DNA of 63,802 bases, filler included, from Octopus bimaculoides (GCF_001194135.2; 5 parts of 4 records of this genome joined end to end with filler, not necessarily neighbours in it); one strand, 5' to 3'. Positions 18,688 to 36,520 are shown, counted from the first letter of the whole stretch. Numbers and translations: made by a program. The notes: generated from the letters alone by a model not told the origin.

Positions 18688-18740
18688 CCAATGAAAAAAT
18701 TTTTGTTCACCATAATCTGGATCTTTCATGAATTAATTAT
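18688..18740 (+). CDS. CACNA2D: alpha2/delta-like calcium channel subunit, exon (phase 0 to 2): PMKKFLFTIIWIFHELI(M)
   Basis: Acceptor TTCTTTTTTTTTCCAG| and donor |GTAAGT; 53 nt. With the next exon it gives WIFHELIMFITEWSF, matching the hydrophobic end of vertebrate alpha2 (alpha2delta-4-type W..ELVLFLLEWS). Confidence 0.8.
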
Positions 18741-18877
18741 GTAAGTTTTTATGTTACACTTTATTTCATGAGAAAATTAAAATACTTTGTTGTTATTTAT
18801 GTAAACTGTCTATTATTTAAACCTGTATTGAATGTGTGTGTACGTGGGGGGGGGCTGTGTGTGTGTGTGTGTGTATG

Positions 18878-19130
18878 TACTGGTACTCCAACGGTTACAA
18901 GGATGAGTGTTCCCGTAGATCCTATCAATGGAACAACCTGCTCATGAAATAAACGTGCAAGTTGCAAAGCACTCCAGAGATACACCTACCTTTAATATAG
19001 TTCTCAGGGAAATTCAGCATGATACAGAATGTGACAAGGTTGGCCCTTTGATATGAAGATACAACTCATTTTTGCCAGCTGAGTGGACTGGAGCAATAGG
19101 AAATAAAGTGTCTTGCTCAAGCACACAATG
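18878..19130 (-). mobile_element. SINE with family D-like body and family C-like 3' tail
   Basis: Reverse complement contains CTTGAGCAAGACACTTTATTTC...CCAGTCCACTCAGCTGGCAAAAATGAGTTG...CAAAGGGCCAACCTTGTCAC and the tail shared with 59395-59762. Confidence 0.7.
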
Positions 19131-19152
19131 CACTACAATATATGTATGTATG

Positions 19153-19231
<79 letters not shown>

Positions 19232-19317
19232 TTAGGGTGAACCTGCAGCAGAATAGTCTTCCAATTAGGGGAAGCTTTGGCCTGCTTGCCTAGCCAATAA
19301 GGTGGCATCATTTAAAA

Positions 19318-19369
19318 GCTAAAACAATGCAAAGTGCATTGCAGCTAAAACAATGCAAAGTGCATTGCA
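19318..19369. repeat. Perfect 26-bp direct duplication
   Basis: GCTAAAACAATGCAAAGTGCATTGCA twice; each unit carries a CAATGCA-AAG-TGCATTG hairpin; lies within a dispersed-repeat remnant. Confidence 0.9.
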
Positions 19370-19868
19370 ACCAGTGATGTATAACAATATCTGATAATCT
19401 GGTCAATCACATCAGGACCTGTCTCTCATGTCAGTTCATAATGTCTGCTATCCTGGTTTTCTTGCTTGAGAGGAGATAACCACTCTGAAGTACATACATC
19501 CAGTAGTCTGGTCAGGGACCACTGTGAACTGATTCAGTGTGTTTACACCTTTCTGTCTACAATAAGAAATTTTCTCCCTGACAAAAAACAGTGAATAGCT
19601 TTCTTAGAAATGTGAATACACCTCAAGCATACTTGAACTGATAACAAGTTTGTATTTATACACATTAGTGTTTAGCACTGTCACCCTCTGTGTGTGTGTG
19701 TGTGTGTGTATACATGAGGAATCAATGCTAGATGTATCAAAACAATTGTTGTGATAAATAACGAATTCTCATATATTCCATCTTCCATTTGCTATATATC
19801 ATCATCATCATCATACACATTCATATGCATATATACACAAAAACACTCGCATTTATATGCATGTAGTA

Positions 19869-19907
<39 letters not shown>

Positions 19908-20227
19908 NNNNNNNNNNNNNNNNNNNNNNNNNNNNNNNNNNNNNNNNNNNNNNNNNNNNNNNNNNNNNNNNNNNNNNNNNNNNNNNNNNNNNNNNNNNNN
20001 NNNNNNNNNNNNNNNNNNNNNNNNNNNNNNNNNNNNNNNNNNNNNNNNNNNNNNNNNNNNNNNNNNNNNNNNNNNNNNNNNNNNNNNNNNNNNNNNNNNN
20101 NNNNNNNNNNNNNNNNNNNNNNNNNNNNNNNNNNNNNNNNNNNNNNNNNNNNNNNNNNNNNNNNNNNNNNNNNNNNNNNNNNNNNNNNNNNNNNNNNNNN
20201 NNNNNNNNNNNNNNNNNNNNNNNNNNN

Positions 20228-33190: not shown

Positions 33191-33400
33191 TCAACCCTGT
33201 GCTGAAACACACTCTGCCTATTTTTCAATTAATTTTGAAAATAACAATGAATTTAGTTAAATAAGTTTGTCATTATTATGCTGATGTTTGAGACATAAAT
33301 TAACATGAAATTCTGCTGGAAAGTTCTAGTTCAGACCACTTTAAAACAGAAAGTTTATATCATAGATACAAGGACAGGTAGAATAGTATCAAAAGGTCAA
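33191..33400 (-). mobile_element. piggyBac-like MITE, decayed, inverted relative to 35203-35416
   Basis: Internal ATTAACATGAAATT...CACTTTAAAACAGAAAGTTT...GTATCAAAAGGTCAA is the reverse complement of the 35203 copy. Confidence 0.55.
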
Positions 33401-34697
33401 GGTCTTTCTTCTTTTCATTGCAGAATTAAATTTAGCATAAAATCTGTCTTACATTTCATAAGTAACCCCCACCTACCTTTCTTTGTAAACAAGAGGATTC
33501 ATAATCAATTTATAATGTTAACGATGTTTATTGTGTTCACTTCTAAGGGGAAATTACCATGAAATGTGACTGACTCCAGTTGAAACTATGTTTCATTCTC
33601 TTAGAAGTGAATACAGCAAACATCATTAATATTATAAAGTAAATTTATTATAATTCCCTTGTTTACAAAAAAGAGGGTTGGAACTAATGAAATATAAGAT
33701 AAAGTGGAAAAAAAGTTAAAATAAACATCAAAAGTGTGATATTAAATATGTTTTTTGATCATAGTAAATAGAAAACTATTCTGATAATTTCTGTGAAAAA
33801 ATGTACTAAGTATACTCCTACCCATAATATTACCAAAGAAAGATGGTTTTTAAATTCAAAAACTTTGTAAACAGAGTCATTTTATAAATAAGTATTAATG
33901 TATCTTATTTATTCATTTTCTTTTATCTCTTCTACTTTCAAACTTAGGCTAAAGTCAATATAAATCAATAATTCTGTAGTCATAGCTCTATTTTATATTT
34001 GTCATGTGAAAACTTAATATAATTTATAAATATTTCTTCTTCATTAAAAAAATAATCTTTGTAAAAATTAAAAGCATTATTTTGTTATTTCCATGTTGTG
34101 AAATATTTAACAGAAATAATATTATAGTTATGGAGAGGGAAGTGGAAATATTTATCAATTAAGATTTTTTAAAATTTATCTAATAGTTTTAAATCTGAAA
34201 CTACCATGCATTGTGGTTGTGAAAATAACTGTGTTCAAGGTTGATGAGTTTGAATCTAAATTGAACCAAAGATTTTTTAGAAAAGTTAACAATATTTTTC
34301 TTTTACATGGTTTATAGAACTTTTTTTTTTCTCCTTCCAAAAATAATATTAAATTTACATGATTGCTTGAATCTTATCATGAGGTGTCATTATCTTCAAG
34401 AGGAAATAGTTCTTAAATTTTAAATTGCTTTGCAGGCTCTTAATTAAATCCAGAAATATTTGCCAAAAATTTAATTATTTCTTTACAAACATCTTTGAAA
34501 ATATTCCGTTGGTAGCACAACAGAAAATTGTTAATTCTAACTAAATTCACAGCTAGTCATCACTGCTGGAAGCACATTGAAAGAAAACATGCAAACTCCT
34601 TGTCTTCATTTTCTTAGTAAACATGTACTCAAGGTTCACACTAGTTTAAGATGGTTGAGTCAGTGTAATATTTACATGTTTGTCAGTTGTGAATGTG

Positions 34698-34930
34698 AAA
34701 GGGCATGGCCTAGTGGCTAAAGTGACTGCAAGACTATAGTTTCAATCCCTGGACCAGGTAGTGCATTGTGTTCTTGAGCAGAGCACTTCATTTCACATTG
34801 CTCTGTGATCACTTCAATCCCTGACATGTAGTACACTTTGCATCTGTTCAAGCAATGCCAATTCGATGGAGGGAGTAAGCTAATGTACAGCCCTTACATC
34901 TGACCACAAACCATTTGTGCCAATTAATTA
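34698..34930 (+). mobile_element. SINE family D, decayed
   Basis: GGGCATGGCCTAGTGGCTAAAG...GTTTCAATCCCTGG...GTGTTCTTGAGCAGAGCACTTCATTTCAC. Confidence 0.7.
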
Positions 34931-35202
34931 ACAAGAAATTGCAGAACCATCTTTCTCAGTAATGAATAACTTAACCATAAAAGGGGATGTTAGATATGGG
35001 GTTGTACAAATAAGTTACCTTCAATTCAATCTAAGATGAAATAAGGTTGTTAATTGTATCATCCTAATTCTGTTCTACTTCCAATGGAACTGAAACAGAG
35101 TTTGTTTTAAAGATGAGAAATAACACATTAGTATAAAGAGACTGCATAATACAATGCTTTCCACTTTAATACATGTGATTATAAAGTAAAAAGTTTGTTT
35201 AA

Positions 35203-35416
35203 CTCTTTTGATGCTAACCTATCCGAGAGCACCTTCTATAATACAAACTTTTTGTTTTAAAGTGATCTAGATTAAAACCTTTAAAATTCCATGTTAGTTT
35301 ATCTTCCAAACACCAGTTCAATTATTACAAAGTTATTTTACAAAATTCTTCATTATTTTCAAAACTAATTTAAACAAAGCCAGTGTATTGCAACATAAAT
35401 CTGGTTTTGAAAAGGG
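35203..35416 (+). mobile_element. piggyBac-like MITE
   Basis: TTAA|CTCTTTTG ... GAAAAGGG|TTAA, with TTAA at 35199-35202 and 35417-35420. Confidence 0.72.
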
Positions 35417-36110
35417 TTAAAGTTTTTTAGAAAGGTATGAATGTTAAAATGTTCAGAACTTATATTCTTGGTATTAATAAAGATGATCACACAGAATTTT
35501 ATACATGCTGCTAAAAGTGAAGTATTTTACTATATCTACTATATTAAAATATGAGATGTAGAAATATTTATTCTGTATCATCCTTGCATTTGTGTTAACT
35601 ACCCTATTACCAATACATTATGTGTATATATAATGTATATAATATAATATAATATAATATAATATATATATATATACATATATACGTGTGTGTGTGGATA
35701 TATGTTCATATGGGGAAACAATTAGCATATGTTAATGTTGAAGATTTGCATATGAATAATTAATGATAATATTGTTTATGTCACTTAAAATTTACATATT
35801 GGAATAGTATTTTGTCTAGCAACTGATGACTTCCTTTGAGGGTGTGTACTGAAAATGATGAAATTATATCATAAAAAATTCCATTTTAATTATTTAATCA
35901 CAAAAGCATTTTACCTTTACTCATTTCAACCAGAAGCTGTGGCCATGCTGGGGCAATACCATTACTGTTTAATTTATTTTCTGAGGTGTCAAAATTTTTA
36001 TCACATTGCTGTGAGCTGATCATTGACACACCAAAGAAATCATTGGAAAGTGAACTCAACAGTTTTTTTATGTAATTGCTAAAAATTAATGTTAATCAAA
36101 GAAAGATCTT

Positions 36111-36305
36111 GGTAGGGAGCTGGCAAAATCCTTAGCATGCTGGAAAAAGGGTTTTGTGACATTTCCACCAATTTTACATTCTTAGTTCCAATGCCACCAA
36201 GGTCGACCCTGCCTTTGTTCTTTTGGGGGGTCAATGTAATCAATTCCCCACTCCCCCATCCCCACCCCCGAAATTGCTGGCCTTGTGCCAAAATTTGAAA
36301 TCAAT
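36111..36305 (+). mobile_element. SINE family B, decayed
   Basis: GGTAGGGAGCTGGCAAAATCC head and GAAATTGCTGGCCTTGTGCCAAAATTTGAAA tail; ends just before the last acceptor. Confidence 0.78.
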
Positions 36306-36350
36306 TAAAGAACGAACTTTATCTTTTTTTTTTCTTTTGTTTTATTTCAG

Positions 36351-36520
36351 GAAGAAGGAAGTGTAAATACCCAGACAACAGTTGGACACAGTGCAGTATT
36401 ACTATCTATGCTACCACTCTTTTCATCCTACTGGTCGCTGTATTTATAGCAGAGAATAATTTAAATTCATTCATGCATGTAAATTGGCTGACAGATGTAC
36501 AGACATACATGCACACATAA
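36351..36520 (+). CDS. CACNA2D: Probable terminal exon of the alpha2/delta-like gene (membrane anchor); reading frame ambiguous
   Basis: Very strong acceptor CTTTTTTTTTTCTTTTGTTTTATTTCAG|. The phase-0 frame reads EEGSVNTQTTVGH...LPLFSSYWSLYL* (TAG 36447-36449). The shifted frame reads RRKCKYPDNSW...TTLFILLVAVFIAENN...MHT* (TAA 36518-36520). Confidence 0.62.

What the first reader, a model, noticed from the sequence alone, without database searches (positions are those of the whole stretch)
18688..36520. Hidden multi-exon alpha2/delta (CACNA2D)-like gene end that the ORF track mostly misses
Seen: six exons of 26-211 nt with canonical AG/GT ends join with matching phases (0-2-1-2-1-1-0) into one open frame: PMKKFLFTIIWIFHELIMFITEWSFANWISKSSRVSGEEDY...KPCEKSVSLF...NSC...PEYCYINKDFRITYATQQIPNTNLLLLVVKQMNCICE...NPLVNETDECKKLKQTGATKGDYSYQCFSSYE. 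Known: the QQIP.SNL..VV..C.C motif and the ordered cysteines are hallmarks of the delta chain. The closest resemblance is to the alpha2delta-3/4 type. About 0.7 kb of coding sequence is spread over 18 kb.
Basis: partly seen in the sequence, partly recalled or inferred. Interest (0 to 1): 0.7.

Follow-up and report, generated by a model that had tools for sequence, protein, structure and literature searches.

The report
Octopus alpha2delta calcium-channel gene end

Summary
The six exons have AG/GT ends and phases 0-2-1-2-1-1-0, and they join into a 564-nt open frame. The piece is 100% identical to Octopus bimaculoides chromosome CM046603.1. The peptide matches an NCBI model named 'alpha-2/delta-4' (P0001, 323 aa). 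That model adds a seventh, terminal exon (36351-36449) and uses a different exon 5/6 junction.

On its own the peptide hits nothing in Pfam or PDB. It gets one hit among 1.84 billion representatives. A profile built from the C-termini of 107 non-cephalopod alpha2delta proteins scores it 86 bits, E 1e-25; the best of 1000 shuffles scores 6.9.

Orthologues, including an mRNA contig, are colinear across all seven exons. So both N gaps lie in introns and hide no coding sequence. The upstream neighbour model (743 aa; VWA_N, VWA, dCache) is the same gene, split off by assembly gaps. Best relatives are alpha2delta-3/4.

Verdict: already known, low interest. One side observation: cephalopod orthologues lack the Cys that anchors the alpha2-delta disulfide in alpha2delta-1.

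The parts
18688..18740 (+). Piece exon 1 (53 nt, enters in phase 0): PMKKFLFTIIWIFHELI(M). It begins the hydrophobic helix near the C-terminal end of alpha2.
   Evidence: AG/GT ends. 100% match to P0001 aa 103-120. Aligns to the profile consensus PlkalfsavkWlltElvlFL.
20692..20747 (+). Piece exon 2 (56 nt, phase 2): (M)FITEWSFANWISKSSRVS(G). It ends at the position that aligns with the mapped alpha2/delta cleavage region of rat alpha2delta-3 (MTAKAQ).
   Evidence: Alignment, read together with Kadurin et al. 2016 (PMC5092059). That cleavage happens here is inferred.
24250..24460 (+). Piece exon 3 (211 nt, phase 1): an acidic linker, then KPCEKSVSLFLADFNAVPSDGIAGSYSYSNSC..., the start of the delta core with conserved Cys65 and Cys94.
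   Evidence: In the orthologue model these residues form strands with pLDDT 72-86.
26779..26804 (+). Piece exon 4, a 26-nt micro-exon (phase 2): PEYCYINK. It carries Cys111 and belongs to a cephalopod-specific insertion in the region of the otherwise adjacent C-x-x-C pair.
   Evidence: present in the O. sinensis model and in the P0004 mRNA. Searches give two alternative alignments of the Cys.
27367..27501 (+). This is the most conserved delta motif, with Cys141 and Cys143.
31257..31342 (+). It has Cys167 and Cys184; Cys184 is the counterpart of human alpha2delta-1 C1059, the delta-side partner of the alpha2-delta disulfide.
   Evidence: Numbering. The C404-C1059 link is from bioRxiv 10.1101/2021.07.08.451561.
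36351..36449 (+). The protein ends in an 18-residue hydrophobic tail with no cytoplasmic extension (a GPI-signal-like or membrane-anchor segment).
   Evidence: Kyte-Doolittle mean 1.4 over the last 18 residues. Tail aligned with the hydrophobic tails of other alpha2delta proteins.
19908..20227 (.). Assembly gap inside intron 1 of the piece, flanked on both sides by (TA)n.
   Evidence: Orthologues are colinear across the exon 1/2 junction.
29114..29125 (.). Assembly gap inside intron 5 of the piece, with (TA)n on its left side.
   Evidence: Orthologues are colinear across the exon 5/6 junction.

Best explanation
Window 18688-36449 holds the last seven coding exons (666 nt, 221 codons plus stop, spread over 17.8 kb) of the single Octopus bimaculoides gene for an alpha2delta-3/4-type auxiliary subunit of high-voltage-activated calcium channels.

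Shown here: the exons, their splice phases, their identity to an annotated protein, their homology to the C-terminal part of alpha2delta proteins, and purifying selection on them.

Inferred from what is known of the family:
- Exons 1-2 encode the last ~36 residues of the alpha2 chain, a hydrophobic helix.
- The pro-protein is cleaved near SRVS/GEEDY, at the exon 2/3 boundary.
- Exons 3-7 encode delta: a small, Cys-rich extracellular piece whose beta-strands pack into the alpha2 body.
- Delta stays attached to alpha2 through disulfide bonds and ends in a hydrophobic signal that is swapped for a GPI anchor or acts as a membrane anchor.
- The mature protein sits on the outer face of the membrane, binds the extracellular loops of CaV1/CaV2 alpha1 subunits, and increases channel trafficking and current.

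The NCBI annotation splits the gene into a 743-aa N-terminal model and this 323-aa C-terminal model, because assembly gaps hide about 55 codons between them.
For: - Exon chain verified.
- The piece is 100% identical to GCA_001194135.2 CM046603.1.
- P0001, named alpha-2/delta-4 of O. bimaculoides, is identical apart from one junction.
- The upstream same-strand model has VWA_N, VWA and dCache_1. P0001's start Met is internal to an exon whose frame stays open up to an acceptor at L001 9899. O. sinensis residues ~606-662 are missing exactly where L001 has gaps at 6121-6518, 8218-9021 and 9324-9333.
- Argonauta P0002 carries VWA_N, VWA, dCache_1 and VGCC_alpha2 and runs straight into exons 1-3.
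- O. sinensis P0003 is 97% identical and gap-free over all 221 residues. P0004 is 69% identical and sits on intron-less 4.1-kb contigs from three sequencing runs, so it is an mRNA.
- The non-cephalopod delta profile scores 86.3 bits, E 1.1e-25, against at most 6.9 bits for shuffles.
- Six Cys align to Cys columns shared by all 13 aligned alpha2delta proteins, apart from one Lineus residue at Cys143.
- pN 0.168 versus pS 0.771 against the P0004 mRNA.
- The AlphaFold model of the orthologue (pLDDT 72.8, pTM 0.72) matches solved alpha2delta-1 over ~995 columns, E 1e-53, TM 0.62-0.66.
- Cleavage, GPI anchoring and function are taken from PMC5092059, PMC9657823 and bioRxiv 10.1101/2021.07.08.451561.
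Against: - No expression data for O. bimaculoides itself could be consulted, so the exon 5/6 junction and the use of the micro-exon in this species rest on gene models and on a related species' mRNA.
- The peptide alone is too diverged for Pfam, PDB or whole-database phmmer.
- Cleavage, disulfide linkage and GPI anchoring are untested in any cephalopod.
- The Cys that anchors delta to alpha2 in alpha2delta-1 (C404) is Gly in all three cephalopod orthologues, and the Cys of the 'CGG' motif before the tail is Val/Ile. The mode of attachment may therefore differ.
- No AATAAA or ATTAAA signal lies between the stop codon and the end of the piece.
Confidence: 0.96

Rival explanations
1. Same gene, but the exon 5/6 junction is the one the reader drew (donor after 27489, acceptor before 31248, giving ...LQLNPLVNETD...). 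It could be the main form or an alternative to the NCBI junction (27501/31257...LQLSKLTLNETD...).
For: Both choices keep the frame.
Against: The NCBI models of two octopus species both use 27501/31257.
Confidence: 0.25
2. The piece is a truncated duplicate or decaying fragment of an alpha2delta gene, as the stand-alone 323-aa model would suggest, and not the end of a working full-length gene.
For: NCBI lists it as a separate 323-aa protein with its own Met.
Against: The Met is internal to an exon whose frame stays open up to a splice acceptor. The N-terminal two thirds of the protein lie just upstream on the same strand. The missing ~55 residues coincide with assembly gaps. All frames and splice sites are intact. 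pN/pS is about 0.22 against a distant cephalopod, and identity to O. sinensis is 97%.
Confidence: 0.02
3. The exons belong to another VWA-Cache protein such as CACHD1, or to an alpha2delta-1/2-type gene, rather than the alpha2delta-3/4 type.
For: CACHD1 and alpha2delta-1 share the overall fold and are both recovered.
Against: For the same query, alpha2delta-3/4 proteins score 475-616 bits, alpha2delta-1 256 bits and CACHD1 47 bits. TM-score is 0.62-0.66 to alpha2delta-1 against 0.51 to CACHD1. The gabapentin-type VRRRP motif of alpha2delta-1 reads CRLQG in the cephalopod protein.
Confidence: 0.02

Closest known systems
Vertebrate CACNA2D3 / CACNA2D4 (alpha2delta-3 and alpha2delta-4), and invertebrate proteins named alpha2delta-3-like
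   Same: Same domain order: VWA_N, VWA, dCache_1, VGCC_alpha2, delta, hydrophobic tail. The whole-protein search, run with a composite of Argonauta P0002 aa 1-815 plus the 221 window residues, gave its best non-cephalopod hits here: 32-40% identity and 475-616 bits. The delta motifs are shared: PxxxxxxxxxWxxxElxxF, pC, QQIPxxNLxxVV, CxC, NE(S/T)xxC, xC(H/F), acidic EE, hydrophobic tail. The RRR gabapentin motif is absent.
   Different: Cephalopods have a longer acidic linker after the predicted cleavage region and a ~14-20-residue insertion, partly a 26-nt micro-exon, at the C-x-x-C pair. They lack the Cys of 'CGG' before the tail, the 'WMAC' Cys of the VWA domain and a C-x7-C pair, and they gain 'ETCC' and two further Cys. 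The octopus gene is most likely co-orthologous to both vertebrate genes, so the NCBI labels '-4' (O. bimaculoides) and '-3-like' (O. sinensis) are best-hit names only. This last point is inference.
Mammalian alpha2delta-1 (CACNA2D1), solved in CaV1.1, CaV1.2, CaV2.1 and CaV2.2 complexes (e.g. 5GJV, 7MIX, 7VFS, 8FD7)
   Same: Same fold over ~995 aligned columns. Colinear up to DYQ(A/S)xC(H/E)P just before the piece's first exon. The delta-side Cys of the C404-C1059 bridge is conserved as window Cys184.
   Different: Only 24% identity. The delta region is not detectable by phmmer. There is no RRR motif, and the C404 counterpart is Gly in cephalopods.
Drosophila straightjacket and C. elegans UNC-36; O. 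vulgaris CACNA2D3 orthologue
   Same: Invertebrate alpha2delta subunits treated as CACNA2D3 orthologues. An O. vulgaris transcript of this kind has already been reported (PMC12919962).
   Different: Not compared at sequence level here: none of the three is among the named hits of the 120 best listed.
CACHD1
   Same: VWA-Cache architecture; recovered by sequence and by fold.
   Different: Much weaker: 47 bits, TM 0.51, 14% identity. It is a type I membrane protein that acts on other partners (the solved entries are Frizzled/LRP6 complexes).

Membership tests
Voltage-gated calcium channel alpha2delta subunit (CACNA2D family) | Domain order VWA_N - VWA - dCache_1 - VGCC_alpha2 on the same polypeptide | tested here: met
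   The domains themselves lie outside the piece. The upstream same-strand model of the same locus has VWA_N, VWA and dCache_1, and P0001 has VGCC_alpha2 at 37 bits against a cutoff of 22. Orthologues P0002 and P0004 carry all four on one chain that continues into the piece's exons.
Voltage-gated calcium channel alpha2delta subunit (CACNA2D family) | Homology of the C-terminal ~220 residues to the end of alpha2 plus delta | tested here: met
   An HMM built from the last 230 residues of 107 non-cephalopod members scores 86.3 bits, E 1.1e-25, against a shuffle maximum of 6.9 bits. phmmer with filters off (--max, E up to 10) maps the peptide to the C-terminal end in every row inspected, and all 107 members are hit. 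The plain Pfam scan of the peptide was negative.
Voltage-gated calcium channel alpha2delta subunit (CACNA2D family) | Conserved ordered cysteines of delta, including the partner of the alpha2-delta disulfide (human alpha2delta-1 C1059) | tested here: met
   Window C65, C94, C141, C143, C167 and C184 fall in conserved Cys columns. C184 aligns with the C1059 position. The last conserved Cys, in 'CGG', is Val194, so 7 of 8 at most.
Voltage-gated calcium channel alpha2delta subunit (CACNA2D family) | VWA-domain Cys (alpha2delta-1 C404, 'WMAC') that forms the intersubunit disulfide | tested here: not met
   It is Gly ('WMAG') in the three cephalopod orthologues, against Cys in 55 of 56 other members. 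The O. bimaculoides VWA exons were not in the DNA available. This is a conserved residue, not a domain-level criterion, so it raises a question about mechanism rather than about membership.
Voltage-gated calcium channel alpha2delta subunit (CACNA2D family) | Proteolytic cleavage into alpha2 and delta | not testable with these tools
   Positional evidence only: rat alpha2delta-3 MTAKAQ (PMC5092059) aligns with window SRVSG/E at the exon 2/3 boundary. The site itself is not conserved in sequence.
Voltage-gated calcium channel alpha2delta subunit (CACNA2D family) | C-terminal hydrophobic segment (GPI-anchor signal or membrane anchor) with no cytoplasmic domain | tested here: inconclusive
   The last 18 residues, AVLLSMLPLFSSYWSLYL, have mean hydropathy 1.4, follow small residues (G-H-S), and the protein ends there. 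They align with the tails of other members. No GPI predictor or experiment was available, and the usual 'CGG' is replaced by 'VGH'.
Voltage-gated calcium channel alpha2delta subunit (CACNA2D family) | Binds CaV1/CaV2 alpha1 subunits and raises current density | not testable with these tools
   Needs co-expression and electrophysiology.
alpha2delta-3/4 subtype (as opposed to alpha2delta-1/2) | Closest relatives are alpha2delta-3/4, and the RRR gabapentin-binding motif is absent | tested here: met
   Every hit that carries a subtype name among the 120 best listed is alpha2delta-3 or -4(-like), at 475-616 bits, against 256 bits for alpha2delta-1. The cephalopod protein reads CRLQG where alpha2delta-1 reads VRRRP. 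No formal phylogeny with alpha2delta-1/2 sequences was made.

The most novel reading that the evidence does not exclude
Cephalopod alpha2delta-3-like proteins may attach delta to alpha2 differently from every studied alpha2delta. All three cephalopod orthologues have lost the VWA-domain Cys that forms the essential alpha2-delta disulfide in alpha2delta-1 (WMAC to WMAG). They keep its delta partner, which is window Cys184 in exon 6. They have gained a new Cys next to a conserved one in the VWA domain (ETCC). They have also lost the Cys of the 'CGG' motif before the hydrophobic tail (window Val194), and they carry a micro-exon-encoded insertion at the delta C-x-x-C pair. Either the bridge has moved to the new Cys, or delta is held non-covalently and Cys184 pairs elsewhere.
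Probability: 0.35. Interest if true: 0.3.

Novelty: already known. Interest (0 to 1): 0.12.

Why it matters
It matters little beyond annotation quality. It shows that a sequence-only reader can chain short eukaryotic exons, including a 26-nt micro-exon, correctly across 18 kb. It also shows that the O. bimaculoides RefSeq entry for this channel subunit is one gene broken in two by assembly gaps and given an arbitrary paralogue name. For cephalopod neurobiology, alpha2delta-3 is of interest as a conserved nociception gene, already noted in the O. vulgaris transcriptome (PMC12919962). A correct full-length model, and the unusual cysteine pattern, would be useful to anyone who expresses the octopus channel complex.

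Tried and rejected
- Pfam scan of the 188-aa spliced peptide: no family even at E 10.
- phmmer of the peptide and of P0001 against PDB: only chance hits, or none.
- phmmer of the 221-aa peptide against 1.84 billion representatives: one hit only, Argonauta, covering exons 1-3.
- Word-indexed homology searches with the 188-aa and 356-aa queries: only the self model. A long composite query was needed.
- Contig look-up for P0003: not on record.
- Nucleotide comparison of the P0004 mRNA with the two candidate exon 5/6 junctions: not decisive. 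In that call I first placed the NCBI junction one base off (27500/31256); the correct position is 27501/31257.
- tRNA and Rfam scans of the piece: nothing.
- Ten other ORFs of 85-146 aa in the introns and flanks: no Pfam family. They are microsatellite or repeat translations.
- Polyadenylation hexamers downstream of the stop: none within the piece.
- The idea that cephalopods lost the first Cys of the C-x-x-C pair was dropped. The full-length alignment places the insertion between two retained Cys.
- Chance concatenation of open segments, a pseudogene fragment and CACHD1 were considered and rejected (see rivals).

Full report
**What is in the window.** Only 16298-37739 is real sequence. It is 32% G+C and full of (TA)n and (TG)n microsatellites. 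It contains four N runs, at 17971-17980, 19908-20227, 29114-29125 and 36994-37199. It is 100% identical, block by block, to Octopus bimaculoides assembly GCA_001194135.2, chromosome CM046603.1. In the fetched locus this is L001 31376-52817, so window coordinate = L001 coordinate minus 15078. The piece is bounded on both sides by larger assembly gaps.

**Checking the observation.** The exons are 18688-18740, 20692-20747, 24250-24460, 26779-26804, 27367-27489 and 31248-31342. Each follows an AG, mostly behind a pyrimidine-rich tract (weak before 31248), and precedes a GT. Four of the six donors are GTAAG. The entry phases are 0,2,1,2,1,1 and the chain ends in phase 0. The joined sequence is 564 nt and gives 188 codons without a stop, exactly the peptide quoted.

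**The gaps, which were to be tested first.** 19908-20227 lies in the intron between piece exons 1 and 2. 29114-29125 lies in the intron between exons 5 and 6. Each borders a (TA)n tract, the first on both sides and the second on its left, which is the usual cause of such gaps. The reading frame does not run through either gap; it is carried by splicing. To see whether an exon could be hidden in a gap, I compared orthologues:
- Argonauta hians P0002 reads across the exon 1/2 junction without an extra residue.
- O. sinensis P0003 (97% identity) and P0004 (69% identity) read across both junctions, and across all seven exons, without insertions.
- P0004 sits on intron-less contigs of 4.06-4.18 kb from three independent sequencing runs, so it is a transcript.

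The order and orientation of the exons therefore match a real mRNA of a related cephalopod. Nothing coding is missing from the piece.

**What it is.**
- On its own the spliced peptide is surprisingly silent. It has no Pfam family even at E 10 and no PDB relative. It has a single hit among 1.84 billion cluster representatives, the Argonauta protein, over exons 1-3 only.
- The word-indexed search did return one near-identical protein, P0001: 323 aa, 'voltage-dependent calcium channel subunit alpha-2/delta-4 [Octopus bimaculoides]'.
Its only Pfam match, VGCC_alpha2 at 37 bits, falls in those upstream residues. It also contains a last exon at 36351-36449, EEGSVNTQTTVGHSAVLLSMLPLFSSYWSLYL plus a stop at 36447-36449.
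- The next model upstream on the same strand is a 743-aa protein with VWA_N, VWA and dCache_1.
- P0001's start Met is internal to an exon: the frame stays open for 33 more codons, up to an acceptor at L001 9899. Those codons (LNTTAITVSVPVLKCAGGGDRQNYTVAGVSGYQ) are present in the orthologues.
- About 55 residues of the O. sinensis protein (aa ~606-662) have no counterpart in L001 between 5904 and 9899. That is exactly where three assembly gaps lie.

So there is one alpha2delta gene, split into two models by gaps, and the piece holds its 3' end.

**An independent test of the family assignment for the exons in the piece.** A long composite query (Argonauta residues 1-815 plus the 221 window residues) retrieved 1264 proteins. 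The 120 best include molluscs, annelids, a brachiopod, a nemertean and many vertebrates, and all the named ones are alpha2delta-3 or alpha2delta-4(-like).
- I built a profile from the last 230 residues of the 107 non-cephalopod proteins of at least 1040 aa. It scores the window peptide at 86.3 bits, E 1.1e-25. The best of 1000 shuffles of the peptide scores 6.9 bits.
- The alignment runs from the first residue of piece exon 1 to the hydrophobic tail.
- phmmer against the same 107 proteins places the peptide at the extreme C-terminus in every row inspected, and all 107 are hit.
- Six window cysteines (65, 94, 141, 143, 167, 184) fall in Cys columns shared by all 13 aligned proteins, apart from one Lineus residue at position 143.
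- Against the P0004 mRNA, the 666-nt coding sequence has pN 0.168 and pS 0.771. Synonymous sites are saturated and the ratio is about 0.22, so the exons are under purifying selection.
- An AlphaFold2 model of the O. sinensis orthologue, built on a 59-sequence alignment, has pLDDT 72.8 and pTM 0.72. It matches solved alpha2delta-1 chains over ~995 columns (E 1e-53, TM 0.62-0.66), with CACHD1 next at TM 0.51.
- Within the part that corresponds to the piece, the conserved strands are confident (pLDDT 72-89). The linker after the hydrophobic helix and the cephalopod insertion are not.

**Subtype.** For the same query, the best vertebrate alpha2delta-3 scores about 500 bits, solved alpha2delta-1 256 bits and CACHD1 47 bits. 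Where alpha2delta-1 has the gabapentin-type VRRRP, the cephalopod protein has CRLQG. The '-4' and '-3-like' labels on the two octopus models are best-hit names.

**How it most likely works.** The exons, their homology and the selection on them are shown here. The rest is inferred from the family.
- Alpha2delta is made as one chain, cleaved into alpha2 and delta, held together by disulfide bonds, and attached to the outer leaflet by a GPI anchor or a short membrane segment. It raises the surface expression and current of CaV1 and CaV2 channels (PMC5092059; PMC9657823; bioRxiv 10.1101/2021.07.08.451561).
- The cleavage region mapped by mutagenesis in rat alpha2delta-3, MTAKAQ (PMC5092059), aligns with window SRVSG/E, which is the exon 2/3 boundary.
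- On that reading, piece exons 1-2 encode the end of alpha2 and exons 3-7 encode delta, about 184 residues before tail processing.
- Numbering taken from an alpha2delta-3 to alpha2delta-1 alignment shows that human C1059, the delta partner of the C404-C1059 bridge, is the 'VCFDN' Cys. That Cys aligns with window Cys184 in exon 6.
- The protein ends in an 18-residue hydrophobic stretch with no cytoplasmic tail, as expected for a GPI signal.

1. The exon 5/6 junction. NCBI's models for both octopus species use a donor after 27501 (GTATCC) and an acceptor before 31257, giving LQLSKLTLNETD. The P0004 mRNA (LQPNRLKVNETD) has the length of the NCBI form, but its nucleotides do not decide between them. 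I favour the NCBI junction at about 3:1. Alternative use of both is possible.
2. The terminal exon, 36351-36449, belongs to the gene. This brings the coding sequence in the piece to 666 nt over 17.8 kb.

**A side observation.** In the 59-sequence alignment, all three cephalopod proteins read WMAG where 55 of 56 others read WMAC; this is the C404 position of alpha2delta-1. They read (V/I)GH where the others have CG(G/S) just before the tail; this is window Val194. They lack a C-x7-C pair upstream of the piece. They have three Cys of their own, one of them next to a conserved VWA Cys (ETCC). In that alignment the window's Cys94 and Cys111 match the two Cys of the usual C-x-x-C pair, so the cephalopod insertion, part of which is the 26-nt micro-exon, lies between them. 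The smaller alignment placed it after them. Whether the alpha2-delta bridge has moved to the new Cys cannot be told from sequence.

**Other contents of the piece.** There is no tRNA and no Rfam family. No Pfam domain occurs in ten other ORFs. Three diverged copies of a ~170-200-nt interspersed repeat with an internal (CA)n tract lie in introns. No canonical poly(A) hexamer lies between the stop and the end of the piece.

**Verdict.** The gene is already annotated, in two fragments, and a CACNA2D3 orthologue has been reported from the O. vulgaris transcriptome (PMC12919962). It is an ordinary member of a well-known family, and interest is low.

Noticed in passing
L001 1-10087 (upstream of the piece; assembly gaps at L001 6121-6518, 8218-9021, 9324-9333): The NCBI annotation splits one alpha2delta gene into a 743-aa model (VWA_N, VWA, dCache_1) and the 323-aa model P0001. 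P0001's Met is internal to an exon whose frame is open back to an acceptor at L001 9899. About 55 residues present in O. sinensis (aa ~606-662) are missing where the gaps lie. The two octopus models also carry different paralogue names ('-4' and '-3-like').
   Followed up: yes
Orthologues P0002, P0003, P0004 (P0003 G283, C224, N723, V731, V999); window Val194 (codon in exon 7, 36351-36449) and Cys184 (exon 6): Cephalopod alpha2delta-3-like proteins read WMAG where 55 of 56 other members read WMAC, the alpha2delta-1 C404 position that forms the alpha2-delta disulfide. They also lack the 'CGG' Cys before the tail and a C-x7-C pair, and they gain 'ETCC' and two more Cys. The delta-side partner (the human C1059 position, window Cys184) is kept.
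   Followed up: partly
window 26779-26804 with the end of exon 3 (about 24437-24460): The 26-nt micro-exon (PEYCYINK) and the end of exon 3 encode a cephalopod-specific insertion of 14-20 residues at the delta C-x-x-C pair. It is present in the O. sinensis model and in the mRNA of a third cephalopod. It is modelled with low confidence.
   Followed up: partly
window 26850-27140 (+), 29960-30250 (+), 23240-23480 (-): Three diverged copies of a ~170-200-nt interspersed repeat with an internal (CA)n tract lie in introns; a 152-nt core of the first two is 79% identical. It looks like a SINE-type element. ARAGORN and Rfam find nothing in it.
   Followed up: partly
window 17971-17980, 19908-20227, 29114-29125, 36994-37199: All four assembly gaps in the piece border (TA)n microsatellites, on one side or both. 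The assembly breaks at simple repeats, and the stretch 37200-37739 is almost pure TA/TG-rich low-complexity sequence.
   Followed up: yes
window 36450-37739: No AATAAA or ATTAAA hexamer lies in the 1.3 kb between the stop codon and the end of the piece, 206 bases of which are N. The 3' UTR either uses a variant signal or runs beyond the piece.
   Followed up: no
window 18688-36449 (the peptide as a whole): The delta region evolves so fast that the 221-aa peptide finds a single relative among 1.84 billion cluster representatives and nothing in Pfam or PDB. A family-specific profile nevertheless gives 86 bits. Negative general searches on short spliced peptides should therefore be read with care.
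   Followed up: yes
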